Positions 9,877-43,518 of a stretch of 64,000 nt of DNA are shown one piece after another. The stretch is from positions 62,001 through 126,000 of IMG/VR virus record IMGVR_UViG_3300032307_000369; one strand, 5' to 3'. The position numbers and the translations under genes are program-made. The notes under the pieces are model-generated. The model worked only from the letters and a program-made list of their open reading frames with translations. It searched no databases and had not been told where the DNA came from. Position 1 is the first letter of the stretch. Every line of letters begins with the position of its first letter.

Positions 9877-9905
9877 TTGACATTCAAGGGCATAGATGTT
9901 ATTAT
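9877..9905 (+). promoter_or_regulatory. sigma70-type promoter
   Basis: TTGACA-N17-TATTAT. Confidence 0.65.
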
Positions 9906-9933
9906 AACACTATGTCCTTTTTTATTGGTTATT

Positions 9934-10950
9934 ATGATTAAACGTATAGGTTTCGCATGTAAGTGGATTGATCGCCCTGATCAAGTAGATGGTATCAAGC
10001 CAACCGACGATTGTAAGCAATATAACACTGGCGCTACCACCATTACTTGGTTAAATAAACAAACAAAAGAAGTTGCTGAACAAAAACTATGGGACCTAAT
10101 GGTCCAAAACTTAGAAGCAACACGATTACTTGTTGAAAGGGTAGGCAAACAACATGAAAGACTCCGCATGGTTCGCCTTAGTAGCGACATTCTTCCTGCT
10201 TATACCCAATCTGATTGGAGTTATTTTTGGAGTAAACCTGACGTTGTTGAGTATCTTGAACGCAATTTCATCCTTATTGGTGATAGTGCTCGTGCAAGCA
10301 ATACCCGTGTTTCTATGCATCCTGGTCAGTTTACTGTTCTTGCTAGTGATAATCCGGACATTGTTCGGAGAAGTATAGAGGAGTTTGAATATCATGCAGA
10401 TATGGTCAGGTACATGGGCTACGGTAAACAATTTCAAGACTTTAAAATTAATGTCCACATCTCGGGTAGAGCCGGTCCCGAAGGTATTCGAGCTGCCTAC
10501 AAAAAACTTTCCCCTGAAGCAAGAAATTGCATCACAATTGAAAACGAGGAAATGAGCCATGGGTTATCTACTTGCTTGTCTCTTGGTGATCTTCTTCCTA
10601 TCGTACTTGATATACATCATCACTGGATTAAAGAAGGTGAATACATCATGCCAAATGACCCAAAAGTACAGCAAGTACTTGACAGTTGGCGTGGTCTTCG
10701 CCCTACTATGCACTATAGTATTAGCAGGGAAGATGTGCTTGTTGATCACTGCACTCTAACTAAACCCAATCACGAAGCTCTTTTAGAGTCCGGATACAAA
10801 AAACAAAAACTTAGGGCACACAGTAACTTCTATTGGAATAAGGAAGTTAATGATTGGGCATTGAGTTTTAATGATCAATTTGATATCATGTGCGAGAGCA
10901 AGGCTAAAAATTTAGCCAGCAAAGCTCTTTTTGATTATTCCAATACATGA
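9934..10950 (+). CDS. uvsE: UV damage endonuclease
   Basis: RIGFAC, RLSSD, SMHPGQF.VL.S, INVH, IENEE, LDIHHH, HYS, RAHS, MCESKAK. Confidence 0.92.
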   Translation: MIKRIGFACKWIDRPDQVDGIKPTDDCKQYNTGATTITWLNKQTKEVAEQKLWDLMVQNLEATRLLVERVGKQHERLRMVRLSSDILPAYTQSDWSYFWSKPDVVEYLERNFILIGDSARASNTRVSMHPGQFTVLASDNPDIVRRSIEEFEYHADMVRYMGYGKQFQDFKINVHISGRAGPEGIRAAYKKLSPEARNCITIENEEMSHGLSTCLSLGDLLPIVLDIHHHWIKEGEYIMPNDPKVQQVLDSWRGLRPTMHYSISREDVLVDHCTLTKPNHEALLESGYKKQKLRAHSNFYWNKEVNDWALSFNDQFDIMCESKAKNLASKALFDYSNT

Positions 10951-11024: not shown

Positions 11025-11303
11025 TTACGAAGTCTTCTTAGGCGCCCTAGGTTTAGTACCAACTTTCTTTACAGCTGGTGCTTTTGCTGGGGCTTTTGGT
11101 TTTGGAGCTGCCTTAGGTTTTGCAGGTGCCTTAGCTTTAGCGGGAGCCTTTTTAGTTGCTGGCGCTTTTTTAGCTGGGACAATTGATTCAACCACAGCCT
11201 GAGTTGCTTGTTCTGCAACAGGTGCGGGTGTTTCAACTTTATAAGGAACTTCTGCTGTTACTGGCTTCTCTGAACCAAATAATGATTTTAGAAATTTAAT
11301 CAT
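11025..11303 (-). CDS. Ala/Lys/Pro-rich histone-H1-like protein
   Basis: AAGGAG SD; PAKKAPA repeats. Confidence 0.7.
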   Translation of the reverse strand: MIKFLKSLFGSEKPVTAEVPYKVETPAPVAEQATQAVVESIVPAKKAPATKKAPAKAKAPAKPKAAPKPKAPAKAPAVKKVGTKPRAPKKTS

Positions 11304-11425: not shown

Positions 11426-11472
11426 AATGAATGTGGGCCACGAACTACAATAACAATAAGGTTCAATTAGTT

Positions 11473-12198
11473 ATGTTAAAAATTACAAATCTCTCCGTCA
11501 ATTACGACGTTATTCCAATTTTGGAAGATATCAATTTAGAAATCAACGAAGGCGAAATTCACGCTATTCTAGGACCAACAGGATCTGGAAAAAGTTCCTT
11601 GGCAAGTACAATAGCTGGTAAAACAGACCTCAGTGTTGTTAAAGGAAAAATAAACTTTAAAAGAAAATCTTTGAACAGTTTAAATCCAAATGAAAGAAGT
11701 AAGTTAGGAATTTTTACAACCTTTCAAGAACCTCCTGAAATTAATGGGATCACAAATTTAAATTTAACCAGACAAATTTTAAATGCTCGTAATGACAAAA
11801 GATCATCAACTGACATTATTAATGATTACAAAAGTTTAATAAAACAATTTGATCTAGGAAGCGAATGGTCCAATCGAGATTATAACGTAGGAGCAAGTGC
11901 AGGCGAAAAAAAGAAAAATGAAATTGTACAGTTACACATGCTCAATCCATCTCTTACAATTTTAGACGATATTGACAGTGGTTTAGACTTAGACACACTA
12001 ACCGAAGTATTTAAAAGTTTAAAAACTTTCCTATCACAAAAAGGAAAGGCAGCTATCATTATCACACATCAACCAACGATCCTTGAAGCAATCGAGCCCA
12101 CCCATGTGCATGTTATCATAGATGGAAGAATCGTAGAGTCAGGTGATAAGAAACTAATTAAAAGGATCATTTCAAATGGCTATCGAGAGTTTTCTTAA
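11473..12198 (+). CDS. sufC: SufC-like ABC ATPase (divergent)
   Basis: GEIHAILGPTGSGKSS, FQ.P.EI.G, S.GEKK.NEI.Q, ILDDIDSGLD, IITH. Confidence 0.85.
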   Translation: MLKITNLSVNYDVIPILEDINLEINEGEIHAILGPTGSGKSSLASTIAGKTDLSVVKGKINFKRKSLNSLNPNERSKLGIFTTFQEPPEINGITNLNLTRQILNARNDKRSSTDIINDYKSLIKQFDLGSEWSNRDYNVGASAGEKKKNEIVQLHMLNPSLTILDDIDSGLDLDTLTEVFKSLKTFLSQKGKAAIIITHQPTILEAIEPTHVHVIIDGRIVESGDKKLIKRIISNGYREFS

Positions 12199-13000
12199 AG
12201 TTGATTCACAAGACCCAGATTGGTCAAACAGTCCCACTCAGTACTTTGGTAAAAAATTTAAGGTCATTGATGCAAATTGCTTAATGATAAAAGAAAATAC
12301 TGATGACTTAATGGTTCTACGTATGAACCCAACTGAGTCAGATTTGCTGTGTAAAAATTTGCAAGTTCTTGGAAAAGATAGTAGTAGATTAGATTTGTTT
12401 ATTTTATGTGACGGATCTAAAAATACTCAACAGGTTTTTATTTACAATGTAACTGCTGAGCCAGATTCAATTATTAATATTGGAATTTTTGTTAAGGACG
12501 GAAAACTTAATAAGCATATTTTTGAATGTGAACTTTATGAGAATTCTGTTATTAACATTTTTGGTCTTGCAGAAAACGAAGTTGGTGGCAGTAGTGAAAT
12601 CATAAGCAAAGTTTACCATGCAGGTCCTTGTGCAGAGAGCAACACATTTGTAAACAGTATTGCTGGAAAAAATAGTCGAACTGTTTTTCAAGGCATTGTC
12701 AAAATTGAAGAAGACATGATAGACAGTGTTGCCAGTGTAACTAACACTAGTATTACATGTGATGAAACTGCCCAAGCATTTAGTACTCCGCAAATGATAA
12801 TTGATTGTGGACAAGTGAGAGCATATCATAACTGTGAAGTCAACACTGTTGACGAAAATAACATATGGTATTTAGAAAGCAGGGGAATTGATAGAAGTAG
12901 TGCTGAAACTCTATTAAAAACGTTGCATCAAGATAGTGTGTTGGACCTTGTTGAATATCAAGACATTAGAGATGAACTCAAAGATTTTTTCCAAAGTTAA
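12176..13000 (+). CDS. sufD: SufD/SufB-family beta-helix protein
   Basis: VFQG.VKI, S.PQM.I, AYH, WYLESRGI...A..L. Confidence 0.75.
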   Translation: MAIESFLKVDSQDPDWSNSPTQYFGKKFKVIDANCLMIKENTDDLMVLRMNPTESDLLCKNLQVLGKDSSRLDLFILCDGSKNTQQVFIYNVTAEPDSIINIGIFVKDGKLNKHIFECELYENSVINIFGLAENEVGGSSEIISKVYHAGPCAESNTFVNSIAGKNSRTVFQGIVKIEEDMIDSVASVTNTSITCDETAQAFSTPQMIIDCGQVRAYHNCEVNTVDENNIWYLESRGIDRSSAETLLKTLHQDSVLDLVEYQDIRDELKDFFQS

Positions 13001-14120
13001 AAGCGATTTTACTTTACCAGACAAAACATACTTAAACAGTGCATCACAAACTTTAATTCCTAATCAAGTAAAAAATTCCTACCTTGATATTTGTAATAAA
13101 ATTGATGCAAGGAAAGAGTATGAAAATGTTAGACAAAAAGTAAAACTACTAATTAATTCTAAAAAAGATAATGAAGTAGTTTTTACTCAAGGCAACAATC
13201 ATAGCATTAATATGATTGCCAAAAGTATTTGTCATAAATGGCATTCAAATGATTGTGTAATTGTTCCTGAAAGTGAGCATCATGCCAATTTACTCATTTG
13301 GCAATACATGTCAATTGAATACGGTTTTAGATTTGAAACTGTAAATGTTATCAAAGACGGCAGCATGGATCTTGGTCATCTTGAAGACTTGCTAGACAGT
13401 TGTGATGGTAAAATATTGTTCAGCATGAGTCACATATCCAACAGCATTGGATATGTACAGCCTGTTAAGAGTATTTTTGACAAGGTTAAAGAGTATGACG
13501 GAATAACTCTACTAGATGCAAGTTTGAGCATTGGTAGAGAATTGATAGATGTGCAAGAGTTTAATATTGATTTTCTAACATTTACTGGTCATAAATTTTA
13601 TGGTCCAACTGGTGTTGGTATATTATATGGCAAGCAAAAATATTTAGACAAGTTAGAGCCTACTATATTAGGCGACAGTAATAGCACATTATTACCATGG
13701 AAATTAGAAATTGGTAAACCTAATATTGCAAGTGTAGTTATGTTAGGTTCAGCAATTGATTGGTTTACATCATATGATTTAGAAAGTTTTCATACCTACG
13801 ATAAACTTATGAATGCAAATTTTCAAATGATGTTAAATGAATTAGACTTTGTAGAAATATTTCATCCTGGTTATTATAAGGGAGGATTAATTGGATTTAA
13901 TCTACATGGACACCATCCTGCGTATGTGGGTGAATTTTTGTCTAATGAAGGTATTGTATTAAAATATGGACATTTGAATGCAAGACCTATTGTAGAAGAA
14001 AAGTTCCCAAATGGTATACTTAGATTAAGTTGGGCCTGCTATAATACTAAAGAAGACGTTGAACAATTAAGGCAAGGACTTATAAAATTCTACGATAAAT
14101 ATAGTTCTAAAAGGACATAA
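12972..14120 (+). CDS. sufS: SufS-like class V PLP enzyme lacking the catalytic Cys
   Basis: EHHAN..WQ, HISN.IG, TGHKFYGPTGVG, R.S...YNT; GHLNA in place of GHHCA. Confidence 0.85.
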   Translation: MNSKIFSKVKSDFTLPDKTYLNSASQTLIPNQVKNSYLDICNKIDARKEYENVRQKVKLLINSKKDNEVVFTQGNNHSINMIAKSICHKWHSNDCVIVPESEHHANLLIWQYMSIEYGFRFETVNVIKDGSMDLGHLEDLLDSCDGKILFSMSHISNSIGYVQPVKSIFDKVKEYDGITLLDASLSIGRELIDVQEFNIDFLTFTGHKFYGPTGVGILYGKQKYLDKLEPTILGDSNSTLLPWKLEIGKPNIASVVMLGSAIDWFTSYDLESFHTYDKLMNANFQMMLNELDFVEIFHPGYYKGGLIGFNLHGHHPAYVGEFLSNEGIVLKYGHLNARPIVEEKFPNGILRLSWACYNTKEDVEQLRQGLIKFYDKYSSKRT

Positions 14121-14123
14121 AAT

Positions 14124-14513
14124 ATGGCTTATTCTTCACAAGTAATTGATCATTATGAAAACCCTAGAAACGTAGGTTCATTTGATAAAAATGATAATGA
14201 TGTTGGAACTGGTATGGTTGGAGCTCCTGCTTGTGGTGACGTTATGAAATTGCAAATTAAAGTTAATGAACAAGGTATTATTGAAGATGCAAAGTTTAAA
14301 ACTTATGGGTGTGGTAGTGCTATTGCTAGTTCTAGTCTTGTCACCGAGTGGCTCAAGGGCAAGAACTTGGATGAGGCACAAGCCATTAAGAACTCAGATA
14401 TCGCTACTGAACTTGCGTTACCGCCCGTTAAGATTCACTGTTCAATATTAGCAGAAGATGCTATCAAAGCCGCAGTAGCAGATTATAAAGCTAAACATGA
14501 TAACACTATCTGA
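14124..14513 (+). CDS. iscU: Fe-S scaffold protein
   Basis: [32 protein letters not shown]; all ligands intact. Confidence 0.97.
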
Positions 14514-14817
14514 ACAAGCTGCCAATAGGGTAAAAGCAACTCTAGAAAAGCGTGGTAAAGGACTAGGGATTAGATTAGGGGTCAAAACTACAGGTTGTAG
14601 TGGCATGGCCTATATGATAGAATTTGTAGATACTCCTACCACTGATGATATGAGCTTTGTTAGTTACGGAGTTCATGTGTTTGTAGATCCAAAAAGTTTA
14701 GCATACCTTGATGGTGTACAAGTGGAATGGGTTAAGAAAGGTCTTAATGAAGGCTTTGATTTTACCAATCCTAACGAACGTGATCGTTGTGGTTGCGGGG
14801 AAAGTTTTAGAGTTTAA
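14497..14817 (+). CDS. iscA: A-type Fe-S carrier
   Basis: [12 protein letters not shown]...CGCGESF. Confidence 0.95.
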
Positions 14818-15101
14818 ATCTTTCCAATTGGCAAAGTACTGCTAACTGGCATATCCCATATTTTTCTTTTAGTAATGCCCATTCGTTGGGCAAATTTTTT
14901 GACGTCACAATCACCACATACGTGGAAATATTTGTTGCTGAGTCTTTTGGGATCTATTTTAGCATGATCTCTTGTAAAATCCTTGTCGCAATTGTCACAG
15001 CGAAACACATTGATTGTTTTTGTTCTAGTATACTGGTGTTCTTTTCCCAGTTTACTGCTTCGAACATACTTGGAAATTTCTTTAAAAGATCTTATGAACA
15101 T
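14814..15101 (-). CDS. small Zn-ribbon protein
   Basis: CDNC...CGDC; TAAATA 5 nt before ATG. Confidence 0.7.
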
Positions 15102-15182
15102 GCCATTATTTACATTAAGTTTATAAAACTATAAGGTAAATAAAGTGGACAGTTGGTATATCACCCAAATTTGGAGTTAATA

Positions 15183-18100
15183 ATGGCAAGAAAAGACGTT
15201 AATATTGGTTTAACAGGTAACGATGGAACAGGTGACAGCATACGTGATGCGTTTTCCAAAGTTAATGCAAATTTCCAAGAACTTTACGCTAGTCAAGGTC
15301 TAGAGGCCGGACTAACATTTGATAACTTAGTTGACGTTATCAAACCACTTAGACCTAACACAGTTTTAGGCTTAGACAGCTTAGGAAAAACTATTGTTAG
15401 TAGAGATTTAGAAGCGGCTGTTGGTATTAGTATTGACACCGTCAGTGATCCGTCTAAGATAATCTTTAGTATTGCCAACGTTCAAATTAGACAAGACCCA
15501 ACACCAACACTGTCAAACGTACTAGATGGAAGTGGGTTCAAACTAAGTTTCATTGGTGATCCAGAAAATGACCAAGATGCTGTTACTAGAAAATGGGTAT
15601 ACCAAAATTTCTTAAACAGAGATAACATTGACAAGTTAGGTACATTTGACCTAGCCGCTGGCAGTGTCATGCGTCAAAATTTCAAGATCAGTCCAACTCC
15701 AGATAACGGCAATATTAATGCTGGTACAAAAATTATTAATGTTTTTGGTTCAGATGGCGTTACACCAAAAACTGATGTTCAGTTAAAGTTTCAAGCAACA
15801 CACCCTGCTCATGCAACTCGAAAAGATTATGTAGATACCAAGCTGTCATTACAAGGTACTGAGACATTAGATCCAGCAACTGGCTTTGTAAACAAAGGCA
15901 TGGGTGTGATGACAGGTCCATTGATTTTAAATGATCACCCTGGACAGTATGTTGAAATTGATAGGAAGCCAGATGGCACACTGTTCGTACAAGAAGATTA
16001 TAGAGCAGCCACAAGAGGGTATGTTGATTCCAAAACGTATTCTGCCGCAGGTAACATATTTGTCAGTACAAAAGGTAATGACGACATGTGGGATTTTGAC
16101 AACAATCGTCCAAATCCCATTTATGGATATCCTGAGGAAGAAATTGGACGTAGTTGGAGTAAAGCATTTAAATCAGTAAATGCCGCGTGTCGTTATGCAA
16201 CACGAATTATAGATGCTGTTGAATTACAAAATATTCCATATCAAGTTACTCCACAACAAATTTCACGTTGGGCTCCTCCATTTACAACGCCAATTACAAG
16301 TCCAAGAACTCGTGTGCGTGTTAGCTTACAAAATCACGGATTCAAAGATGGAGACTACGTTTTAGTTAGCGGAGCTATCTTAGGATCTTTAGACACAAGA
16401 AATTTAAACGGTATTCACAGAGTTAATGCGTTAGATGTTAACAATTTTGAATTAAATTTAAAATCACTGGTAACATGGCCAAATCCAGAAGTTGCACCTG
16501 GCGGCACTATTAGTATTTCGTTGGCTAATAAAAAGGACGGTCCTTACAGTGAAATTTCTAAGGTTGACTTTGGCTTTAGAGGATTCTTTGTACCAAAACC
16601 TGAAATTACTATTATGGTTGAATCAGGAGTTTACTTTGAAGAAGCTCCTATGTTTGTTCCACCAAACTGTGCTATTAAGGGCGATGAATTTAGACGTACT
16701 TTAATTAAACCAAAGCCAGGACCAGTTAATCCTGATAATCAGCTTACTAAATTTGTTCGTGGTGATAGAAGTCAAAGTGCTACCTTTTGGTATAACTCAC
16801 ACTACTACAATCAATTGTCAAGATCAGTTGGAACCACTAACGTGGTTGGTAGTACAAAATTAGAAATTAAAAATAGTCCTTATAGACCAAAGAGTGGTAT
16901 GCGATTTATTGTGGGTACTCTTGGTGGTATACCAAACGTATATCGAGTTGGACGTGAAGTTAACATTGTTTACAAAGAACCAAATCCAGATTTAAATATT
17001 GCTCCTGGAACATATATCATGGACATCGTTGATGACAACGGTGATCCAAAACCATTGGCAACTGGTATTCCAGATTCAACAACTATAGAATTCTTGTTAG
17101 ACCACGAACACTGTGATGCCATGCTTGTTGCTGATGCATTCCAGTTGCGTAATATAACAGTTATAGGATTTAAGGGCTTTGCTATGGCCTTTGATCCTAA
17201 GAGACAAATTAAAACACGTTCTCCTTATGCTCAAGTTGGCGCTGTATTTGCTGGAGAAGGTGGTGGTGGTCAGTTGGTTGACGGTATGTCTGGTAACCAA
17301 GTATGTTATGTATTAGACACTAGTTATACTGATCCGTTTACTGGAACACAAGGTTCTAGTGGACTTAAAATGACTGTTACTGGATTAGTACGTACTCCTG
17401 AAACTCCAAATACATTTTTCTTGGCTAAGAAAAAATATGTCATTATCGATTCCACAACTCCAGATTCCAACGGTACTGCTACATTAACTTTAAGTACTAC
17501 AACTCCAATTGAAGTTGATGATACTTATTTGCCTGCAGGTTTTATTCCAAACGGTTCTCAAATTTTAATTGAAACTGCTGGTAACCGATCAATGTTGTCT
17601 AACGACTTTACCATGATTAACGATTTAGGTTATGGTCTTGTGTGTGAAAATAACGGTGTTGCAGAAGCAGTTAGTCAATTTACATACTATTGCCGTGCCA
17701 GCTATTTGTCTAGATCAGGTGGACAAATTCGTTCGGTAACAGGATCAAGTTGCTATGGTATTATTGGTTTACAATCTGAAGGTAGCGATCCTAACGAAGC
17801 TATTCAGATTGGTAGAATTAAAACTGACATTGGTAACATCATGCAGGTTTACATTGATGATCCTAGTGCAGATGGCAACCAAGGTGCCGTAAGTTTGGTA
17901 ATGGGAGGTTTGGCAAGTAAGCCTATAAGAAACTCTACATTCAAATTAACCAAACACGAAATCATTATTAAAAATATTGCTCGAGCAAGATTGAGTGGTG
18001 GTACACTAACAACTGGGCCGCTAGTTGTAACAACATATTATCCTCATCCTTTCTCAACTGGAGAGAGTGTACAAATGACCAGTGTGAGAGGATTGCAATT

Positions 18101-21100
18101 GCCTGCAATTCCTCCAAGTACTACCCCAAGAGCAACTGATGTTGATGGAAGAGTTTATACTATTACTTCTGTTAACAGTCACACGTTTACATTAGATGGA
18201 AGTGAAAGCACTAATTATATAAATGATTTAGGAACTTATAATTTTGCTGACTTACCAGCTCGTGCTATATCTAATCTAGTAATTGGAGCACAAGATGTTG
18301 TGTTTTCAATTAAGGGAGATCCTAGTCCATCTAATATTACAGGTAGAGCTAGATTTGATGGCATTCCAGGCGAAAACCAAGCTGGACAAAATGTATTAAA
18401 ACTTCAACGACTACAGCGTCCAGCTGTTGTTGGAATGAAAACAACTATTCCTGGCGGAGTGTTGACCTACACTGTAACTGATGTTACTGAAAAAGTAGTT
18501 ACATTTAAACCATCTCCAAGACCAGCACCTACTGGTGACAATGATAATAAAATTGGTGCACAAACCATTTATATCTACACCACTACAGATATAACTACAG
18601 GTGCTATTAATGGCACAACACTTACTGCTACTAATTTAGATCAAAATAATGTTGGACAATTAGTCACAGGAGCCACTGTAGCTGACAACACATACATTAT
18701 AGCAGTGACCAGTCCTACAACAGCGACTGTGTCAATAAGTCAAACTGTTACTAACAGAACTTTAGAATTAAGTTGGGTTCCTAAAATAGGCTGGAGTTTC
18801 CAGCATTTAGACACCAACATGGGTCTACAGTTAAATTATACTAGATATACAATTACTGATACTCCAGTATATGATGCTGTATCAAATAGATGGGCTGTTA
18901 CCTTAGATGTTCCGCTAACAGTCAATATGCAAAATCAAGAAGCAACTGGTCAAACGACTATTGTTGACGGAATTTGGGACGTTACTTTAAACTATGATTT
19001 AGAAACAAGCATCGCTAACAGTGTAAACCCAGTATCATTTACGTTTGTTGATTCGTATTGGGTTACAAGCATTGATCCGTCATTGACCAACCCAATACCT
19101 ACTGTTACTGATGAATACAATAGAGTACGTGCTCGTAAGATTAATTTATATCAGCAAAAGACAATTAGTGTAAGTCAAATTTTAAACAGACCTGCTATTA
19201 TTAACAGCTCTGCTTTAAGATTCTCATCTTCAAACTATGATCCAAGTATATATCGTATTTTAGGTAAAACTTCTGATGGCGGTATTACACAAGATAGATA
19301 TGCTGTTACTACTACTATAAATCCACTTAGTGGTCTTAATACGAATGCTGTAGAGAAAGTATTAGCAAACAAAACTTGGATACAGTCTGAAGTTATTAAT
19401 TACTTGGCTACAATTTATCCTAATTTCCAATACAATGTTAACACTTGTTATCGTGACGTTGGATATATTATCGATGCAGTACTTTATGACTTAACTTACG
19501 GCGGTAACGTAAGAAGCCGTGCCGCTGGTATTAGTTATTACCAACAAGGTAATCCAAGTGCGGCTCTTGTATTAAGTCAGCAAAAAGTAGAAACAATTGA
19601 TGCAATTAATTTTGCGACCACTGCGGCAATAACTGCCTTAAATCAATATAGTGGCGCAACAGTACCTCAATTACAACTACCATATCGTGGAAGTAATTTA
19701 AACGGTGTTGCACAATTACAGGCAAATAAACTGTTTATACAAGATGAAGTTATTGCATTCTTAGCACAAACATATCCTACTTTACAGTTCAATCAAACTA
19801 CTTGTCGTAGAGACGTTGGATTGATTATTGATGCTGTTGCATACGATTTAGAGTATGGTGGTAACGTGGCAACTAGAACGGCTGCTCTAGCATACTATGA
19901 TGGATCAACAAGCTCACAGTATGTGTTGTCTAATCAAAAAACCCAAACCATTGCTGCCATTAACAGAGCATCTACAGTTGCTCAACAAATTGTTTTAGAA
20001 ACTGCTGTAACTGCGACTGCTGGCAACACTGCAACACAAAATACTGCTGGTACTCCTGGAGTTGCTGGTGTTGATGACGTAAGAGTTCAAACATTAATGA
20101 ACATTATTACTAATGTTCTACAAAATGGTACTTCTGTTGCTCCAACTAGAAATTTAGGAATTAGAAGAAGTTATCAAGATCCTCTAGGTGTAGAGTATGC
20201 CCCACAAAGTATTGACAGTGGCATTGTAGCAGAAGCCGGTGCTGCCACAGCATTGCAAGCTCTAATGGACCAAATTGTAGCCATAATTGAATTTGGCACT
20301 ACAGGCCCGCATGTTGTTGTACAGCCACAAGTGTTAGATACTTTACAGGCAATTGATTTCCCACCAACTGCAACATCATTACAATATGGCGCAGTATTAA
20401 CTGGTCCTGGAATTCCTAAAGCAGGAGTTAACGGCGTTACCGAAGATACATTTATTAGAACAGTGACTCAATTGTTTGATGAAAATCAAAATACAATTGG
20501 CTACAGAGCTAGAATTAGTGCGCCAGTAACACAAGCAATTCCTGCTGGTACAGAAATTGTTATTACTGGTCCTGGTAGTGACTTCTTATTTGATCTAAAC
20601 ACTCCACTAGACCTTAGACACTTAGCAGGCGATGTAATTGGTATCACTACCACATTCTCAACTGTACGTGCAACTGGTCATGATTTCTTAAACGTTGGGG
20701 CAGGTGGATATGATGACTCTAACTATCCTAATAACGTTTATGGTCAACCAGTTAATACGCCATCTGACAGTGCAATTGCTAAAGAGGTTGGGACTGGTCG
20801 TGTGTTCCACGTGTCAACTGATCAAAATGGTAATTTTAGAGTAGGTAGCTTCTTTAACGTTAACCAAGGTGACGGATCTGTTAGTATTAGTGCTAAAATT
20901 GGTTTAAGTGCTGTTACAAGTTTAAGTTTCTTAACTGGTGCAACCGTTAACCAATTCTCAACTGATTCTAAGTTAGACGACAATAGTGACAACATTGTTT
21001 CTACACAAAAGGCAATGAAGACCTACATCAATAACTTGATTGACGGTCGTTTTACAATTGACAATACTGATACTCCACAACGTGGTCTATTAAGACTTGA

Positions 21101-23717
21101 CGGCGAAAGTATCATGGTTGGTGATTTAGATGTTGGTTTGAACAGTGTTGAACGTATAGTAAACAGTCCAAACAATGACGGCAGTGTTAATAGAAAGTAT
21201 GTTGACAATGTGTTTGCTGGTGGATCTATTGATTACGATGGTTCTTATGCAATTGAAACAACTGGTCGTAGAACAGATGTATTAGCGTTCACTATGATAA
21301 CTGACAACACATCAGTTGGTGGTGTTCCAAATAATAGGGGTGGAATTGATCTTAATGACAATAAGATACAACGCCTAAAATCTCCAACTGAATTGACCGA
21401 TGCAGCCAACAGAGCGTATGTTGATCAAACAATTGCTACAGGCGGTGTAAGATTAGGTTGGACTGGATTCACTCTTTCTAATACTAATATAAGAAATACA
21501 GTATCTAGCATAAGCATGGTAAACAACGGTGGAGGATATCTTGTTCCACCAGCAGTTGTACTTTATTCTACTAGTGGTACTGGTGCTGCCGCAAGAGCAG
21601 TATTAACTGCTGGTACTGGTGCTAGAAGCGTTAATAATATTATTGTTGATATTGGTGGCTATGGATACACAGAAGCTCCAATTGTTATTATTGGCGGTAG
21701 TGTCTCTAACGTCAACGTAAACAACTCTGGAACTGGATATAGCAGTGCTCCAACACTAACATTTAGTGCTCCTCCAGTTGGCGGCATTAGAGCTACTGGT
21801 TATGCAGTCATGCAGGGAAGTGGCTCAAATCAAATTATTAGTAGCATTGTAATTACAAATGCTGGTGTAGGATATACTCTTGCACCAACTATTGCATTGA
21901 GCGGTGGAGGTTCACCTACTGTAAATGCAATTATTACTGCTGTCCTACAAGCAGGATCAGGCGCAACTGCTACAGCAAGTATCACTGCTACTCAAAGAAA
22001 TATTGATTTAAATGGCAACAAGGTCACTGGTTCAGCAGACCCAACACAAAATACAGATTTAGTAACATTAAATTATTTTAATACTAAAAACTTTATTGGT
22101 GAGATTGCCGATGTAACCATAACCAATGTTCCTGGAAGCGGAGATTTATTGGTCTTTACAGGTACTGTACCAGCTGGAAGTAAAGGGGCTATGGTCAACG
22201 TAGCTGTTGATTCTTCTAGCGATATTTCTTTTGTAAGAAGTGCCAATACAATCACTGTTAATATTAAAGATAATGCTATTATTGATAGTAACATTGCTCC
22301 AAATGCCGCAATACAACAGACTAAGCTATTGTTAAATCGAGCAAATGCTGTAGTTGAAGGTGCTGGCGCAGGTGTTGGTGACTTTGGTATAGTAGCTGTT
22401 AACTCTGCTGAATTTATTAGTGACAGTGGATTAATTAAACTTCGTCAGTCAGAAAATAAAAACACTGGTGTTCGTTTAGATAGAATGCAACAGATTACAA
22501 ACTATCGAATACTAGGAAGATATAATTCTACTGAAAGTGAAACTTCTGTTGGACCAGTAACTGAAGTTCCAGTTGGGGACTTAAAACAATTACTAGGACT
22601 AAGTGCTGCCACAGTTCAAGTGCTTATTAGTGATGATATTTTGGGTGGTAGACAAGTTGACAGCGGCAATCCGTTAAGTCCATTACTTGCTACTAACTGG
22701 AATGGTAGTGCATCTTTTGGTGCTCTACTAAGACGTGGTGGCACAATGATTGGTAAGATTGTTATGACTGATGCTGGCGGATTGCCAGCAGGTGATCCAA
22801 ACATTACTCCAATTATTGGTGTAGGTGCAGGTCTCACAGACAAGTTAGACATTGGTACTAGCGCATTACGTTTCCAAAGTGTGTATGCTAAAAACCATTT
22901 TGGTGATGTTTTCCGAGGAACAACATTTGGAAGCGCAACTGCTCCAACAAGTCAAGGTGGTGGTGCAATATTTAATGGTACTGCTACATTTGCTGGAAGT
23001 TCTGGTGCCTTACAATACGCACTAGTAACTCCTGTAGGTGGTGATCTTGCTCTTAGAGTAGGAGCAAACAATGTAACCTTTAATGGAAGTCAAGAAGTTA
23101 CAATTAGCGTTTTAGCAGAAACTGGCACTGTAAACAATAGTCTTGTAAGAAGAACTAGTGATGGTCAAATTAATGCAAGTCAGTTTAATGGTCCGCTAAC
23201 TGGGTTAGCCACAAGTGCTACTAATTTAAGATTAGGAACAACTGACTATCCTGCAAGTGATAGTGCAAGCAGTACTTCAGTTCCATTACGTATTAATGGA
23301 GTGATAAAGGCTACAACATTTGAAGGTAAGGCAACTAGTGCTAACTATGCTGACTTGGCTGAGAATTATCAAGCAGACTTTGCATATGAGCCAGGAACAG
23401 TACTTGAGTTTGGTGGTGCATACGAAGTAACTATTGCGCAAGACGAAACTAGAAAAGTGGCTGGCGTTGTTTCAACAAACCCAGCGCATTTAATGAATAC
23501 TGAATTACAAGGAGAAAATGTCGTAGCACTTGCACTGCAAGGTCGTGTTCCATGTAAAGTACGTGGTAAAATTAGTAAAGGCGACTTGATGACTAGTGCT
23601 GGCGGCGGGTATGCTCGTCCAACACACGATCCAAAAATTGGAACAATAATTGGAAAAGCGTTAGAGGACTTTGATGGTGTTGAAGGTGTCATTGAAGTAG
23701 TTGTTGGAAGATTGTAA
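15183..23717 (+). CDS. giant tail fibre / baseplate-attached adhesin (~2840 aa)
   Basis: gp9/gp10-like N-terminus NIG...NDGTGD.IR.AF.KVN.NF; A.TR.YVD neck motifs; beta-helix-like region; G.GY..AP repeats; C-terminal ADLAENY autoproteolytic chaperone-like domain. Confidence 0.8.
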   Translation: MARKDVNIGLTGNDGTGDSIRDAFSKVNANFQELYASQGLEAGLTFDNLVDVIKPLRPNTVLGLDSLGKTIVSRDLEAAVGISIDTVSDPSKIIFSIANVQIRQDPTPTLSNVLDGSGFKLSFIGDPENDQDAVTRKWVYQNFLNRDNIDKLGTFDLAAGSVMRQNFKISPTPDNGNINAGTKIINVFGSDGVTPKTDVQLKFQATHPAHATRKDYVDTKLSLQGTETLDPATGFVNKGMGVMTGPLILNDHPGQYVEIDRKPDGTLFVQEDYRAATRGYVDSKTYSAAGNIFVSTKGNDDMWDFDNNRPNPIYGYPEEEIGRSWSKAFKSVNAACRYATRIIDAVELQNIPYQVTPQQISRWAPPFTTPITSPRTRVRVSLQNHGFKDGDYVLVSGAILGSLDTRNLNGIHRVNALDVNNFELNLKSLVTWPNPEVAPGGTISISLANKKDGPYSEISKVDFGFRGFFVPKPEITIMVESGVYFEEAPMFVPPNCAIKGDEFRRTLIKPKPGPVNPDNQLTKFVRGDRSQSATFWYNSHYYNQLSRSVGTTNVVGSTKLEIKNSPYRPKSGMRFIVGTLGGIPNVYRVGREVNIVYKEPNPDLNIAPGTYIMDIVDDNGDPKPLATGIPDSTTIEFLLDHEHCDAMLVADAFQLRNITVIGFKGFAMAFDPKRQIKTRSPYAQVGAVFAGEGGGGQLVDGMSGNQVCYVLDTSYTDPFTGTQGSSGLKMTVTGLVRTPETPNTFFLAKKKYVIIDSTTPDSNGTATLTLSTTTPIEVDDTYLPAGFIPNGSQILIETAGNRSMLSNDFTMINDLGYGLVCENNGVAEAVSQFTYYCRASYLSRSGGQIRSVTGSSCYGIIGLQSEGSDPNEAIQIGRIKTDIGNIMQVYIDDPSADGNQGAVSLVMGGLASKPIRNSTFKLTKHEIIIKNIARARLSGGTLTTGPLVVTTYYPHPFSTGESVQMTSVRGLQLPAIPPSTTPRATDVDGRVYTITSVNSHTFTLDGSESTNYINDLGTYNFADLPARAISNLVIGAQDVVFSIKGDPSPSNITGRARFDGIPGENQAGQNVLKLQRLQRPAVVGMKTTIPGGVLTYTVTDVTEKVVTFKPSPRPAPTGDNDNKIGAQTIYIYTTTDITTGAINGTTLTATNLDQNNVGQLVTGATVADNTYIIAVTSPTTATVSISQTVTNRTLELSWVPKIGWSFQHLDTNMGLQLNYTRYTITDTPVYDAVSNRWAVTLDVPLTVNMQNQEATGQTTIVDGIWDVTLNYDLETSIANSVNPVSFTFVDSYWVTSIDPSLTNPIPTVTDEYNRVRARKINLYQQKTISVSQILNRPAIINSSALRFSSSNYDPSIYRILGKTSDGGITQDRYAVTTTINPLSGLNTNAVEKVLANKTWIQSEVINYLATIYPNFQYNVNTCYRDVGYIIDAVLYDLTYGGNVRSRAAGISYYQQGNPSAALVLSQQKVETIDAINFATTAAITALNQYSGATVPQLQLPYRGSNLNGVAQLQANKLFIQDEVIAFLAQTYPTLQFNQTTCRRDVGLIIDAVAYDLEYGGNVATRTAALAYYDGSTSSQYVLSNQKTQTIAAINRASTVAQQIVLETAVTATAGNTATQNTAGTPGVAGVDDVRVQTLMNIITNVLQNGTSVAPTRNLGIRRSYQDPLGVEYAPQSIDSGIVAEAGAATALQALMDQIVAIIEFGTTGPHVVVQPQVLDTLQAIDFPPTATSLQYGAVLTGPGIPKAGVNGVTEDTFIRTVTQLFDENQNTIGYRARISAPVTQAIPAGTEIVITGPGSDFLFDLNTPLDLRHLAGDVIGITTTFSTVRATGHDFLNVGAGGYDDSNYPNNVYGQPVNTPSDSAIAKEVGTGRVFHVSTDQNGNFRVGSFFNVNQGDGSVSISAKIGLSAVTSLSFLTGATVNQFSTDSKLDDNSDNIVSTQKAMKTYINNLIDGRFTIDNTDTPQRGLLRLDGESIMVGDLDVGLNSVERIVNSPNNDGSVNRKYVDNVFAGGSIDYDGSYAIETTGRRTDVLAFTMITDNTSVGGVPNNRGGIDLNDNKIQRLKSPTELTDAANRAYVDQTIATGGVRLGWTGFTLSNTNIRNTVSSISMVNNGGGYLVPPAVVLYSTSGTGAAARAVLTAGTGARSVNNIIVDIGGYGYTEAPIVIIGGSVSNVNVNNSGTGYSSAPTLTFSAPPVGGIRATGYAVMQGSGSNQIISSIVITNAGVGYTLAPTIALSGGGSPTVNAIITAVLQAGSGATATASITATQRNIDLNGNKVTGSADPTQNTDLVTLNYFNTKNFIGEIADVTITNVPGSGDLLVFTGTVPAGSKGAMVNVAVDSSSDISFVRSANTITVNIKDNAIIDSNIAPNAAIQQTKLLLNRANAVVEGAGAGVGDFGIVAVNSAEFISDSGLIKLRQSENKNTGVRLDRMQQITNYRILGRYNSTESETSVGPVTEVPVGDLKQLLGLSAATVQVLISDDILGGRQVDSGNPLSPLLATNWNGSASFGALLRRGGTMIGKIVMTDAGGLPAGDPNITPIIGVGAGLTDKLDIGTSALRFQSVYAKNHFGDVFRGTTFGSATAPTSQGGGAIFNGTATFAGSSGALQYALVTPVGGDLALRVGANNVTFNGSQEVTISVLAETGTVNNSLVRRTSDGQINASQFNGPLTGLATSATNLRLGTTDYPASDSASSTSVPLRINGVIKATTFEGKATSANYADLAENYQADFAYEPGTVLEFGGAYEVTIAQDETRKVAGVVSTNPAHLMNTELQGENVVALALQGRVPCKVRGKISKGDLMTSAGGGYARPTHDPKIGTIIGKALEDFDGVEGVIEVVVGRL

Positions 23718-23754
23718 GATATCCTAAAATAAATAAGATGAACAGGAACGAAAA

Positions 23755-26700
23755 ATGAGCATTCAATACATAAACATTGGTTCTAACGCAAATGACGGCA
23801 CTGGCGATGATTTGCGAACTGCATTTTTAAAAGTAAATGATAATTTTCAATTACTTGCAACCATAGGTGGAGAGACCAATATTGGTGCAAACCTTGGTGG
23901 TGGCGGGGGACAAGTTTACGCAGGTAAAACTAATGAAACACTTAATTTTAGAACAATTGCTGGTGATGTTAATTCAGGCATAACCGTAAATCAGTCTGGC
24001 AATGTTATTACGATTGCTAGTAATTTTAGTGTTCCTGCATCTATTACTACACTAATATCTGAAGATAACAGTGGTCAATTTACTACTACAAGCCCAGGAG
24101 CTACTTTTAGATTCAATGGCACTGGTGGCGTTACTACTAGTTTAAATGCTAATATATTGACCATTGACGGTCAATTTGCACTAGTGCAAGATACGTTGCC
24201 TTTACTAGGCGGTAATTTAGATTTAAATGGAAGTAATATTACTGGTTTAGGTAATATTAGTATTGTTGGCAATATCACTTCTGATAATTTAACTGTAGGA
24301 AGAATTGTAACTCCTGGAGTGTTTCCTGCAACTGCTACAATTAACGGTTCATTAACTGTTCGAGGATCAACAAGTTTACAAGCTGTTACTGCAACTTCTA
24401 TCGTTACTAACAATATTATAACTGCACCAGGATTTACAGCAACAAGTGGTGCATTTACTGGCAACCTTACTGGTAACAGCACTGGAACACACTATGGCAA
24501 CGTTGCCTTAAAAGTAGTTGATCCATTAGATCCTAACTATCCTGAAATAGTTATAGTTGATTCTGATACACAAACAATAACTGGTTCACATTTTGGTACA
24601 TTTAGTGGCGGTTTGACTGGTTCACTAATTACTGGCGGTCTAGCATTAGATGGTAATAGTATTACTGGTGAAGGTAGAATTGAAGTTACTGGTTCAGAAG
24701 TGCAAACTGGCACAATGGCATTTACTGTAAATGGAAGATTCCACGGTGGTGATTCACCTGCTGGCGTTGCTCCAGAAGCTGATCAAGGACCAGAGTCTGC
24801 CATGTTCACCATGACTCAACAGGTATATGGTTTTTCAGAGCCAATTCGATTAAGAACTGTAAGTAAGAACGGAAGCAATTCAATTCCACTTGGTCCTGGT
24901 ATACGATTTGAATCTGTTAATGAAATTGATCCTAGTGATCCAACAACTTATGACCCATTAAATCCGCCAACACAACCAGAATATGTTTTACATGGTTATT
25001 TGGGAGTGTTAAACTATGATAACGGTGCTGACACAAATCCCGATATAAGTGCATTTGTAGCTAGAGTTAGATCTGACGACGGTGACTTTGTACGTGATAT
25101 TATTATTGCTAGAGGTGACAATCGTGTTAGTATTTCTGGGCTTGATATAGAAGATAGTAAAATTAGTCCAAAATATGATGAAATAGCTTCTGGAGTTTTT
25201 GGAATAACTCCATCTGATTTGATTATTACAAACGGAGCAAGTAATCATTATATTAACTTCTATGGAGAATATGATCCAAATTTCCAAGATGAAGGTTTTG
25301 CAACTGGACCTGGCTACACTGGATATAGTTTTCCAAAAGTAATTGGTGCTCCTGGAGAAGTATTAACTGTACAATTAGGAACCAACTTACTAACTTGGGC
25401 CACACCAGGTGGTGGTGGCGGTGGTGGTGGAACAACTTTACTAAACTTGACTGATGTTCCAGACAGTTACGCTACTCATGCTGGCAAACTTTTAAGAGTT
25501 AAGTCGACCAGTGACGGAATAGAATTTACAAATAGTTTTAATGCCACAGTTACTGGTAGTTTAATTGGAAATGCTAGTACAGCGACTGCCTTACAAACTG
25601 CTAGAACAATCAATGGGTTTACCTTTGATGGTACACAAGATGTAACTATTGACACTCGTCAGATTGAAGAACTAAGACAAGTAGCCTCAAATGCCAATAT
25701 AGTTGGAAGTGGTGGCAGCATTGTATCAACTATAAATATTACCACCTTAGAATCTAACCTAGACGTTAATTTTGGAGAACCTTCAACTAATCAAGGTGCT
25801 AGAAAATTTAGAGTAGGCATGGACATTAAGGGAACACAGATCAGTAATCCAGTTATTACGAATATTTCATTAACTGGTGGAACATTCCCAACTCCAAATA
25901 ATGATAGAACTGTCGTTATAACAGTCACATTTGATGCACAAGTGGTCAATGCTGAGAGTAATATTACTATCACTGGTGAAGTGCAAAATCAGTGGTTTAA
26001 TGATGAAAAAGTTAGATCTGTATTCAGTGTGAGCCCTGGCAGTGCATTATCGTATACAAGTTCATTGGGGCTGTTTGCACTTAATGATTCAGTATCAAAT
26101 GTCAATAACACACTGGTAAGAAGAAATGGTAGTGGGCAAGTTTTCCTTGGCACTGCTTATGTTAGCACACTAACAAAAAATAGTGCTGATACTGAAATAA
26201 CTGTAACAAGTCCAATTTCTACTAATTCTAGTATAACATCATCTGCAAATATTACCACAACAGGCAGTGTTATTGCTGGGTTTATAACACTGACTGGAAC
26301 AGGTAATCAAACTATTTCATCTAGTGCTGGCACTAATATTATTTTGCAACCTGGAACAAGTGTTGATTTAAGCGGTAAGAAAATAACAAATCTTTCAATT
26401 GCGGCTCCAACAGCAGACAGTGATGCGGCAAGTAAAAAATATGTTGACGATGAAATCCAAGGTTTATTTGAAGAAACTTTTCAAGAATTACCTGTATCTG
26501 GAGATACTGGTGGCACGTTAAATGTACAGCGAAGTGCAATTTTTACAGTTGCAGGTAGTTCAAATATTTCTACATCGACCACCGGTACTGGTGTTCAAAT
26601 AAATTTAAAAAATACAATTTCTGGAGTCAGTGTTAGTGGAAACTTACCAGTTACTGGAAACGTAACAAGCTCAGGCGGGTTTATAAAAGGTGGTAATGTT

Positions 26701-27171: not shown

Positions 27172-27174
27172 AAT

Positions 27175-43005: not shown

Positions 43006-43518
43006 ATGGAAAAACTTGTATTTCATCCAGATCCAATTTTAGAAGAACAAATGCCAGCATTTGATTTTGACAATCCTATTATGGATCCTAAAGAATTAGA
43101 AAAAGAACTATTAGCAATTATGTTTGCCAACAATGGCATTGGTCTTGCAAGTCCACAGATTGGCATAAGAACTAGAGTATTTGCAATGGGGCATTCACTT
43201 ATGCCAGAAGCAAGTCTTGCAATGTTTAACCCAACTGTAATTGATGCTAGCAATGAATTTCAAGATATAGAAGAAGGATGTTTGAGTTTTCCAAATATTT
43301 TTGCTAAAATTAAAAGACCTACTTGGATTGTAGTAAAATACAATACTAGTGATAATGAAGAACGAACAGAACGAATGGAGGGTTACAACTGTAAATGTTT
43401 TTTACATGAATTGGACCACTTAGATGGTATTGTAATGAAAGATCGTTTAAGTCAACTTAAATGGGCACTAGCCGTTAAAAAATCAAAAAAGGTAAAAAAT
43501 TATGTTAGAACCAAATGA
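43006..43518 (+). CDS. def: peptide deformylase
   Basis: GIGLASPQ, EGCLS, HELDH. Confidence 0.95.
   Translation: MEKLVFHPDPILEEQMPAFDFDNPIMDPKELEKELLAIMFANNGIGLASPQIGIRTRVFAMGHSLMPEASLAMFNPTVIDASNEFQDIEEGCLSFPNIFAKIKRPTWIVVKYNTSDNEERTERMEGYNCKCFLHELDHLDGIVMKDRLSQLKWALAVKKSKKVKNYVRTK

What the first reader, a model, noticed from the sequence alone, without database searches (positions are those of the whole stretch)
11473..12198. SufC-like ATPase with Walker B Glu to Asp and an altered ABC signature
Seen: ILDDIDSGLD (GAT at 11968) instead of ILDE.DSGLD, and ASAGEKKK instead of FSGGEKKR, with Walker A, Q-loop and H-loop intact. Established: the Glu after Walker B (Glu171 in E. coli SufC) is the catalytic base of ABC ATPases. 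Inference: it binds ATP but hydrolyses poorly. With the Cys-less SufS, two of three Suf genes appear disarmed specifically at catalytic positions, which looks more like selection for a non-catalytic role than random decay.
Basis: partly seen in the sequence, partly recalled or inferred. Interest (0 to 1): 0.68.

Follow-up and report, generated by a model that had tools for sequence, protein, structure and literature searches.

The report
Phage SufC with a weakened ATPase site
A giant freshwater phage carries an iron-sulfur-assembly ATPase (SufC) whose catalytic glutamate is now aspartate; relatives show this is a conserved early step in a repeated change that follows loss of the partner SufB and leaves a SufC-SufD pair whose job seems to need little or no ATP hydrolysis.

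Summary
Window 11473-12198 (+) encodes a 241-aa SufC (TIGR01978 255 bits, cut-off 212.8). It has Asp166 (GAT, 11968-11970) where E. coli SufC has catalytic Glu171, and SAGE in place of SGGE. Walker A, Q-loop, D-loop and H-loop are intact. It is not an error or decay. Asp is fixed in a sub-clade down to 67% identity, and dN/dS is 0.06 against a 96%-identical relative. The context explains it. Sister phages with a full sufB-grx-sufC-sufD-sufS-sufE-sufT-sufA operon keep every SufC motif and the SufS cysteine. Phages without sufB, including this one, carry altered SufC sites, and their SufS is either Cys-less (Cys to Asn) or gone. A second, separate clade keeps only sufC-sufD, with signature, D-loop and H-loop lost but Walker A Lys, Walker B Asp, Q-loop Gln and the SufD-contact surface kept. 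A SufC+SufD tree rejects a single origin (AU p=4e-06). SufC-SufD binding is predicted (ipSAE 0.90, best control 0.00). Most likely this SufC binds ATP, hydrolyses it slowly, stays bound to SufD and works without SufB. ATPase loss and the pair's function are inferred, not measured.

The parts
11473..12198 (+). sufC-like gene, 241 aa (P0001)
   Evidence: TIGR01978 sufC 255.3 bits against cut-off 212.8. E=5e-51 to E. coli SufC chains.
11572..11595 (+). Walker A GPTGSGKS (residues 34-41), consensus-like; Lys40 kept
   Evidence: G34, P35, G39 and K40 are conserved in all three phage clades.
11722..11736 (+). Q-loop (Gln85) and start of the predicted SufD-contact surface
   Evidence: interface residues 71-93.
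11893..11907 (+). ABC signature ASAGE (residues 141-145). Gly143 of the canonical SGGE is Ala.
11959..11970 (+). Walker B ILD plus Asp166 (GAT 11968-11970) in place of the catalytic Glu (E. coli Glu171)
11977..11988 (+). D-loop SGLD, intact
12067..12069 (+). H-loop His199 (E. coli His203), intact here; Gln or Asn in many SufB-less relatives
12176..13000 (+). Short sufD-like gene (274 aa). Its start overlaps the end of sufC by 23 nt. His218 (12827-12829) is the E. coli SufD His360 equivalent and is kept.
   Evidence: PF01458 99.5 bits and TIGR01981 102.8 bits, below its cut-off. Alignment to 2ZU0 SufD. Predicted to bind SufC.
12972..14120 (+). sufS-like PLP protein. The likely start is ATG 12972; the ORF is open from GTG 12936. 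The catalytic Cys is replaced by Asn (AAT 13977-13979) and the PLP Lys is kept (13593-13595).
14124..14513 (+). iscU, with all three Cys, Asp and His ligand positions present
   Evidence: TIGR01999 228 bits against cut-off 192. Sequence. 83-90% identical to beta/gammaproteobacterial IscU.
14497..14817 (+). iscA (A-type carrier), with its three Cys present
   Evidence: TIGR02011 161 bits against cut-off 150.6. Sequence.
9877..10950 (+). uvdE-like gene, the conserved upstream synteny anchor of the sufC-sufD pair in all related phages
   Evidence: PF03851. Synteny.

Best explanation
This is a genuine, selectively maintained SufC-family ABC subunit of an uncultured freshwater jumbo phage. The record is 245.5 kb, and its DNA polymerase is closest to Sinorhizobium phage Phosso and Agrobacterium phage Atu_ph07. 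The ancestral phage carried a complete SUF operon. In the lineage leading to this window sufB, grx, sufE and sufT were lost and a proteobacterial-type iscU was gained. SufS lost its persulfide Cys (Cys to Asn). SufC acquired the two classical marks of a 'degenerate' ABC nucleotide site: catalytic Glu to Asp, and the first Gly of the SGG signature replaced. Walker A/B, the Q-loop, D-loop and H-loop, and the surface that grips the C-terminal helices of SufD, are all retained. I therefore infer that the protein still binds Mg-ATP, still binds the co-translated short SufD (probably as a SufC2D2-like complex), and can still close into an ATP-bound dimer. I also infer that it hydrolyses ATP only slowly, so it acts as a long-lived nucleotide-bound switch or structural partner, not as the turnover motor of a SufBC2D scaffold. 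Relatives show where this leads. First SufS is deleted. Then the signature, D-loop, H-loop and the SufD cluster-ligand His are lost, while the SufC-SufD pair stays under purifying selection. Shown here: the substitutions, their fixation, purifying selection, the link with absence of sufB, at least two independent origins, and conservation of the SufD interface. Inferred: slow hydrolysis, ATP binding, complex stoichiometry, and what the pair does. My leading guess is a SufB-independent accessory of the phage IscU/IscA module that serves phage radical-SAM and other Fe-S proteins. A function unrelated to cluster building is almost as likely.
For: Family membership and residue mapping. Asp is fixed in 7 clusters, and all 69 cellular-type hits have Glu. 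Operon comparison: sufB-containing phage loci (L018-20, L025-28, L007, L009-11, L045-48, L056; L008 has sufB elsewhere in its record) all have SGGE/LDE/[ST]GLD/His in SufC and Cys in SufS. All loci without sufB have altered SufC sites, with SufS Cys-to-Asn or absent. There is no second SUFBD-core gene in the window's 245 kb record or in seven related records, two of them 99-100% complete. dN/dS, window against L002: SufC 0.058 (dS 0.31), SufD 0.048, SufS 0.053. SufCD-only close pairs give 0.04. Column conservation: Walker A G/P/G/K, Gln85, Asp165 and interface residues R75/G79/I80/P87 are shared by all clades, while signature, D-loop and H-loop are lost in the SufB-less clades. SufC+SufD tree: the window clade is nested in the sufB-bearing forms (99), the SufCD-only clade is separate, and the AU test rejects one origin at p=4e-06. 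Complex prediction: ipSAE 0.90 against a best control of 0.00. That mark was reached by 51 of 78 solved complexes and 2 of 108 mismatched pairs. The runs agree in 100% of contacts and partner pLDDT is at least 88. The interface is SufD 226-254 with SufC 48-51, 71-93 and 101-106. This matches the published E. coli SufC2D2 interface (PMC6006206). Literature: K40, E171 and H203 are essential in SufC. Mj SufC E171Q abolishes complementation. Signature changes plus Glu-to-Asp define slow degenerate ABC sites. The phage record encodes two radical-SAM matches above the family cut-off, plus two weaker ones, as possible Fe-S clients.
Against: No biochemical measurement exists. Glu-to-Asp sites can retain some hydrolysis (PMC7756269), and SufC turnover is slow even in wild type, so 'slow' might still be enough. 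Absence of sufB is shown only for the DNA in hand: the window's record is about 70% complete, although complete relatives also lack it. The host is unknown, so a hybrid with host SufB cannot be excluded. The complex score may reflect memory of the solved E. coli SufC-SufD structure. With SufC alone the AU test does not reject a single origin (p=0.085), and the groups were named after seeing a tree. No RNA data were found. The function of a SufB-less SufC-SufD pair is unknown, and the review calls E. coli SufC2D2 probably non-physiological.
Confidence: 0.6

Rival explanations
1. The phage SufC-SufD pair plugs into the host's SufB to make a hybrid SufBC2D scaffold. Asp166 is a tolerated or tuning substitution, and the protein is still a working Fe-S assembly ATPase.
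For: The window's SufD keeps the His360-equivalent ligand. SufC keeps Walker A, Q-, D- and H-loops. In E. coli SufD pairs with SufB and SufC binds both. Asp sites can still hydrolyse slowly.
Against: Every phage that encodes its own SufB keeps Glu and SGGE, so the canonical job selects for them. E171 substitutions abolish SUF function in E. coli and M. jannaschii SufC. Close relatives go on to lose the SufD His, the H-loop and the D-loop. The phage iscU is of beta/gammaproteobacterial ISC type, which is weak evidence on whether the host has SUF at all.
Confidence: 0.15
2. The pair acts as a dominant-negative or sequestering factor. An ATP-locked SufC-SufD and a Cys-less SufS bind host SUF components or substrates and shut down or redirect host Fe-S assembly during infection.
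For: Catalytically dead but binding-competent versions of two enzymes sit in one operon under purifying selection. The partner interface is conserved.
Against: There is no evidence of contact with host proteins, and the host is unknown. The phage also carries intact iscU and iscA and radical-SAM genes, which fits supplying clusters better than blocking supply. SufCD-only relatives lack SufS altogether.
Confidence: 0.1
3. These are leftover genes under relaxed selection after sufB loss, functionless relics on the way to deletion.
For: SufS is deleted in L015, and everything except sufC-sufD is gone in the second clade. Catalytic motifs erode progressively.
Against: dN/dS is 0.04-0.15 in all SufB-less lineages with unsaturated dS. 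ORF lengths stay at 238-245 aa (SufC) and 273-278 aa (SufD) across sequences only 38-45% identical. The 23-nt sufC/sufD overlap and the interface residues are conserved.
Confidence: 0.05
4. Sequencing or assembly artefact at codon 166.
For: None found.
Against: The same codon state occurs in independent assemblies from other samples and studies. Contigs from independent runs cover the site; the table of differences is cut to its 40 best-supported rows of 480 and lists none between 11721 and 12235.
Confidence: 0.01

Closest known systems
E. coli SufC in SufBC2D and SufC2D2 (PDB 2D3W, 2ZU0, 5AWF)
   Same: Same family (above the TIGR01978 cut-off) and the same length class. Walker A Lys40, Q-loop, D-loop, His203 equivalent and Lys152 equivalent are present. 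It is encoded next to SufD and is predicted to grip the SufD C-terminal helices through the Q-loop region, as in the crystal structures.
   Different: The catalytic Glu171 is Asp and the signature is SAGE instead of SGGE. No SufB is encoded. SufD is a short 274-aa form lacking the N-terminal domain. About 40% identity.
Degenerate nucleotide-binding sites of asymmetric ABC proteins (ABCC family, TAP1/TAP2, TM287/288 and similar), reviewed in PMC7756269
   Same: It shows the two commonest marks of such sites: Walker B Glu to Asp, and a signature deviation at the first Gly of SGG. Those sites bind ATP tightly and hydrolyse much more slowly than the transport cycle.
   Different: In those proteins a degenerate site is paired with a consensus site in a heterodimer. 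Here a single sufC gene would make both composite sites of a SufC dimer degenerate. SufC is a soluble, non-transport ABC protein.
Complete phage-borne SUF operons in sister jumbo phages (e.g. L018-L020, L025-L028: sufB-grx-sufC-sufD-sufS-sufE-sufT-sufA)
   Same: Same genomic slot, between uvdE and a giant structural gene. Same 241-aa SufC and 274-aa SufD with a 23-nt overlap, and 59-65% identity.
   Different: Those keep every catalytic residue in SufC and SufS and encode SufB, SufE and SufT. The window has lost these and carries iscU instead.
Minimal SUF / SMS system (SufB*2C2 of methanogens)
   Same: It is also a reduced two-component derivative of the SUF scaffold built around SufC.
   Different: The minimal system keeps the SufB-type scaffold and needs the SufC Walker A, Glu171 and H-motif residues. 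The phage pair keeps the SufD-type subunit, lacks SufB, and is shedding those residues.

Membership tests
SufC (Fe-S cluster assembly ATPase, TIGR01978) | Profile score above the curated equivalog cut-off | tested here: met
   255.3 bits against 212.8. The stricter enterobacterial model NF007134 gives 203 against 400, not met.
SufC (Fe-S cluster assembly ATPase, TIGR01978) | Walker A Lys (E. coli Lys40) and Walker B Asp | tested here: met
   GPTGSGKS and ILD-D165.
SufC (Fe-S cluster assembly ATPase, TIGR01978) | Catalytic Glu after Walker B (E. coli Glu171), essential in vivo | tested here: not met
   Asp166, GAT 11968-11970. Essentiality.
SufC (Fe-S cluster assembly ATPase, TIGR01978) | ABC signature SGGE | tested here: not met
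   SAGE (Gly143Ala). Relatives have STGE or SNGE.
SufC (Fe-S cluster assembly ATPase, TIGR01978) | H-loop His (E. coli His203) and D-loop SGLD | tested here: met
   His199 and SGLD 169-172.
SufC (Fe-S cluster assembly ATPase, TIGR01978) | Encoded with, and binding, SufB and SufD | tested here: inconclusive
   SufD is adjacent and predicted to bind (ipSAE 0.90, best control 0.00). No SufB in the 245 kb record, which is about 70% complete.
SufC (Fe-S cluster assembly ATPase, TIGR01978) | ATPase activity stimulated by SufB/SufD | not testable with these tools
   Needs an enzyme assay.
Degenerate ABC nucleotide-binding site | Catalytic Glu replaced (typically by Asp) and a deviant signature | tested here: met
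   Asp166 and SAGE. Definition from PMC7756269.
Degenerate ABC nucleotide-binding site | Paired with a consensus site in a heterodimeric NBD pair | tested here: not met
   Only one SufC-family gene in the phage record. Pairing with a host SufC could not be examined.
Degenerate ABC nucleotide-binding site | Tight ATP binding with strongly reduced hydrolysis | not testable with these tools
   Needs binding and hydrolysis assays.

The most novel reading that the evidence does not exclude
The phage SufC-SufD pair is a nucleotide-binding pseudo-ATPase module. It has been exapted at least twice independently, each time after loss of SufB, for a conserved function that needs neither ATP turnover nor the SufD cluster ligand, and it is kept by many freshwater jumbo phages. 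The window captures the first step (Glu to Asp, SGGE to SAGE, Cys-less SufS) of that transition.
Probability: 0.45. Interest if true: 0.72.

Novelty: new variant of a known kind. Interest (0 to 1): 0.62.

Why it matters
Fe-S assembly genes in viruses are usually counted as straightforward auxiliary metabolic genes. Here a graded natural series runs from a full phage SUF operon to a remodelled sufC*-sufD-sufS*-iscU-iscA cluster, then to sufC*-sufD-iscU-iscA, and finally to sufC*-sufD alone. Annotation-level calls such as 'SufC' or 'SufS' can therefore hide proteins that have lost catalytic residues yet remain under strong selection. The series offers a natural experiment on what SufC-SufD does apart from SufB, an open point in SUF biology where the SufC2D2 complex has been regarded as probably non-physiological. 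It also adds a soluble, non-transporter example of how ABC ATPase sites degenerate. It cautions against inferring viral metabolic capacity from family names alone.

Tried and rejected
Megablast of the operon against 50,697 phage records found nothing. tblastn found only distant SufC genes of 41% identity or less, many in contaminated records. I checked for a link to the recently described amoC-phages that carry sufB; no AmoC match appeared in this or four related records, although the control genomes also did not ring. I looked for expression, but no RNA run holds the stretch. Laying contigs of four runs confirmed presence in independent freshwater samples and added nothing about the key codon beyond the lack of listed differences; the table of differences was truncated. 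The AU test on SufC alone did not reject a single origin of the degenerate forms (p=0.085); the concatenated SufC+SufD test did. Host assignment from IscU resolves only to beta/gammaproteobacterial type, because IscU is too conserved. Literature searches found no description of phage SufC-SufD pairs or of degenerate SufC. I did not run the large representative-protein search, because the word search and family scans left nothing open. Assembly error and pseudogene readings were considered and rejected (see rivals).

Full report
**What is there.**
Window 11473-12198 (+) translates to a 241-aa protein, P0001. It scores 255.3 bits on the SufC equivalog TIGR01978 (cut-off 212.8) and 66.6 bits on Pfam ABC_tran. 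phmmer against PDB sequences aligns it end to end with E. coli SufC at E=5e-51. In that alignment Asp166 lies on catalytic Glu171, Lys40 on Lys40, Lys147 on Lys152 and His199 on His203. The DNA shows GAC GAT at 11965-11970 and GCA AGT GCA GGC GAA (A-S-A-G-E) at 11893-11907. Walker A (GPTGSGKS), Q-loop Gln85, D-loop SGLD and H-loop His are present. The ATG at 11431 would add 14 residues that no homologue has.

**Surroundings.**
The gene sits in a + strand cluster:
- PTPS (8801)
- cupin (9347)
- UvdE (9877)
- a small Lys/Ala/Pro-rich ORF on the minus strand (11025-11303)
- sufC
- a short 274-aa sufD-like gene whose start overlaps sufC by 23 nt (12176-13000)
- a sufS-like gene (to 14120)
- iscU (14124)
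- iscA (14497)
- a small Cys-rich ORF on the minus strand
- a 2854-aa structural-type gene

The window is bases 62001-126000 of a 245.5 kb IMG/VR virus record, estimated about 70% complete. Its family-B DNA polymerase is closest to those of the jumbo phages Sinorhizobium phage Phosso (50%) and Agrobacterium phage Atu_ph07 (46%). Tail-fibre, endolysin and Lon-type protease matches confirm that it is a phage.

SufS is Cys-less. The loop that reads GHHCAQP in solved SufS structures reads GHLNARP here, with Asn at 13977-13979, while the PLP Lys and HHAN are kept. IscU and IscA pass their equivalog cut-offs and keep all ligand residues. The SufD-like protein keeps the His that aligns with E. coli SufD His360; Cys358 is Ala.

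**Is Asp common?**
A word search returned 607 relatives. Among the best 120, Asp at this position occurs only in P0001-P0006 and P0008. Those are 67-98% identical and all carry S[A/T/N]GE. A larger set of 241-aa phage proteins (P0007, P0009-P0037) has Glu with ASGGE. All 69 cellular-type SufC hits in which the motif could be located have Glu. A third set of 240-242-aa proteins has much more eroded motifs.

**Context decides.**
Loci fetched from IMG/VR and from assemblies were annotated by BLAST against the window's proteins and those of L018, and the SufC motifs were tabulated.

Phages whose SufC is canonical carry sufB. L018-L020 and L025-L028 have uvdE, sufB, (grx), sufC, sufD, sufS, sufE, sufT and sufA in the same slot. 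More distant phage SUF loci (L007, L009-L011, L045-L048, L056) also have sufB. L008, where sufB is not adjacent, has a 477-aa SufB elsewhere in the record. Wherever one of these loci carries a SufS, it reads L/H-C-A.

Every locus without sufB has an altered SufC:
- The window group (L001-L005, L064, L066, L067) has LDD and S[ATN]GE, and its SufS has Asn for Cys (L066's SufS is cut off before that loop).
- L054 has UvdE upstream (L058, same contig) and a SufS with Asn for Cys; the N-terminal third of its SufC falls across a 10-base gap between the two fetched pieces.
- L069 has LDD with a broken D-loop and Gln for the H-loop His.
- L015 has lost sufS (sufC-sufD-iscU-iscA), with D-A at the catalytic pair and Gln for His.
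- A large second group (L017, L029-L043, L047, L051-L053) comes from 140-354 kb phage contigs and has only uvdE, sufC and sufD. Its signature, D-loop and often its H-loop are unrecognisable.

Whole-record searches found a single SUFBD-core gene, the short SufD, in the window's record and in seven related records. Two of those are 99-100% complete 353 kb genomes.

**Selection.**

| Comparison | Gene | dN/dS |
|---|---|---|
| Window vs L002 | SufC | 0.058 (dS 0.31) |
| Window vs L002 | SufD | 0.048 |
| Window vs L002 | Cys-less SufS | 0.053 |
| Deeper pairs | all three | 0.1-0.2, with saturated dS |
| Close pairs in the SufCD-only group | SufC, SufD | about 0.04 |

ORF lengths and the 23-nt overlap are constant across sequences only 38-45% identical. 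These genes are not decaying.

**Where constraint is kept and lost.**
One search compared 22 canonical sequences, 17 from the window's SufB-less clade and 22 from the SufCD-only clade. Positions held in all three groups include Walker A G34, P35, G39 and K40, Gln85, Walker B Asp165, R75, G79, I80 and P87, and much of the C-terminal third. Positions invariant in canonical forms but lost in the SufB-less clades include N36, A38, G143, E166, H199 and Q200. In the SufCD-only clade the whole signature and D-loop are also lost.

In the window itself, 13 canon-invariant positions differ. Five of them lie in or next to ATP-site motifs: N36T, A38S, D86E, G143A and E166D.

The SufD ligand His follows the same trend. 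It is kept in all sufB-bearing phages and in the window, L002, L066 and L067. It is replaced in L064, L069, L015 and L054, and in most SufCD-only phages.

**Phylogeny.**
A SufC tree places the window's SufB-less clade (SH-aLRT 98) inside the sufB-bearing canonical forms. The SufCD-only clade (99) falls apart from them. On SufC alone the AU test does not reject a single clade of all degenerate forms (p=0.085). On concatenated SufC+SufD (518 columns) it does (p=4e-06, log-likelihood difference 65.7), and canonical forms plus the window clade have support 99. With the root on more distant sufB-containing phage loci, loss of sufB with erosion of the SufC site happened at least twice. One caveat is that the groups were defined after seeing the first tree.

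**Partner binding.**
A complex prediction of the window's SufD and SufC scored ipSAE 0.90 in three runs, against 0.00 for the best of three controls. That mark was reached by 51 of 78 solved complexes and 2 of 108 mismatched pairs. The runs agree in 100% of contacts, and partner pLDDT is at least 88. The interface joins SufD 226-254 to SufC 48-51, 71-93, 101-106, 153 and 157. This corresponds to the published contact between the SufD C-terminal helices and the SufC Q-loop region (PMC6006206). Because the E. coli complex is solved, the pass shows likeness more than proof. Even so, the interface residues are among those conserved in all clades.

**Mechanistic reading.**
The SUF review (PMC6006206) records the following:
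- Lys40, Glu171 and His203 of SufC, and His360 of SufD, are essential in vivo.
- SufB and SufD stimulate the SufC ATPase.
- ATP-driven SufC dimerisation opens the SufB-SufD interface.
- SufC2D2 forms when SufB is absent.

E171Q in M. jannaschii SufC abolishes complementation (bioRxiv 10.1101/2024.03.20.586028). The review of degenerate ABC sites (PMC7756269) states that signature changes and Walker B Glu to Asp are the two commonest marks of such sites. It adds that these sites still hydrolyse ATP, but far too slowly to drive the cycle.

The window's SufC has exactly these two marks and nothing else broken. I therefore infer ATP binding, SufD binding and possibly ATP-dependent dimerisation, with slow hydrolysis. 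This step is inference. Only one sufC is present, so both composite sites of a homodimer would be degenerate.

The phage record also encodes two radical-SAM matches above the family cut-off, plus two weaker ones, and no other class-V aminotransferase. A role beside the intact IscU/IscA in supplying phage Fe-S proteins is therefore plausible. However, the SufCD-only relatives, which lack the SufD His and any neighbouring Fe-S genes, point to a function that may no longer be cluster assembly.

**Host and occurrence.**
IscU is 83-90% identical to IscU of Burkholderiales, Neisseriales, Rhodocyclales and various Gammaproteobacteria. This suggests a proteobacterial host with an ISC system but does not identify it. 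Near-identical DNA occurs in freshwater, lake and one subsurface metagenome from about ten studies. No RNA run was found.

**Novelty.**
Searches of the paper library found viral Fe-S auxiliary genes and a sufB in amoC-phages. They found no description of SufB-less phage SufC-SufD pairs or of naturally degenerate SufC. I class this as a new variant of known kinds: SufC, and degenerate ABC sites.

**Limits.**
There is no biochemistry, no host and no expression data. The window's genome is incomplete. The function of the pair is unresolved.

Noticed in passing
window 12936-14120 (+): The SufS-like PLP protein has Asn (13977-13979) in place of the persulfide Cys, with the PLP Lys kept. The same Asn is fixed in every SufB-less relative whose SufS sequence reaches that loop (window group, L054, L064, L067), and dN/dS is about 0.05. 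The true start is probably ATG 12972, which gives a 29-nt overlap with sufD as in relatives, rather than GTG 12936.
   Followed up: partly
window 12176-12310 (+) and SufD of all related loci: The first 45 or so residues of the short SufD (MAIESFLKVD..DPDW....IDANCL) are the most conserved part of the protein in all three phage clades, well beyond the 23-nt overlap with sufC. They replace the N-terminal domain of cellular SufD. No function is known.
   Followed up: no
window 11025-11303 (-): A 92-aa Lys/Ala/Pro-rich ORF resembling a histone H1 tail lies on the opposite strand between uvdE and sufC. An ORF of 92-106 aa is called at the same place and strand in every related phage locus, whether or not sufB is present.
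   Followed up: no
window 14814-15101 (-): A 95-aa ORF with two CxxC pairs (zinc-ribbon-like) lies on the opposite strand between iscA and the giant gene. It is positionally conserved, at 95-115 aa, in relatives.
   Followed up: no
window 15153-31416 (+): Three consecutive very large ORFs of 2854, 1138 and 1413 aa show weak tail-fibre and virion-structural matches. The first is positionally conserved downstream of the Fe-S cluster genes in all relatives.
   Followed up: partly
window 14124-14513 (+): The phage IscU is 83-90% identical to beta/gammaproteobacterial IscU, far closer to cellular proteins than any of the Suf genes (about 40-49%). This suggests a recent host-derived acquisition that replaced the SufB-type scaffold.
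   Followed up: partly
L018-L020, L025-L028 (sister phages): A complete phage-borne SUF operon, sufB-grx-sufC-sufD-sufS-sufE-sufT(DUF59)-sufA, sits between uvdE and the giant structural gene, with clpP and PTPS upstream. It is a self-sufficient Fe-S assembly system in a jumbo phage.
   Followed up: partly
G000:C1 about 5.8-15.9 kb (outside the window): The phage record has four radical-SAM family matches, two of them above the family cut-off. They are possible clients of the phage Fe-S genes, and the nearby PTPS hints at 7-deazaguanine chemistry.
   Followed up: no
window 43502-45784 (+): A 760-aa ATP-dependent protease (phrog_4871, 835 bits) is encoded by the phage. Relatives also carry clpP near the suf locus.
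   Followed up: no
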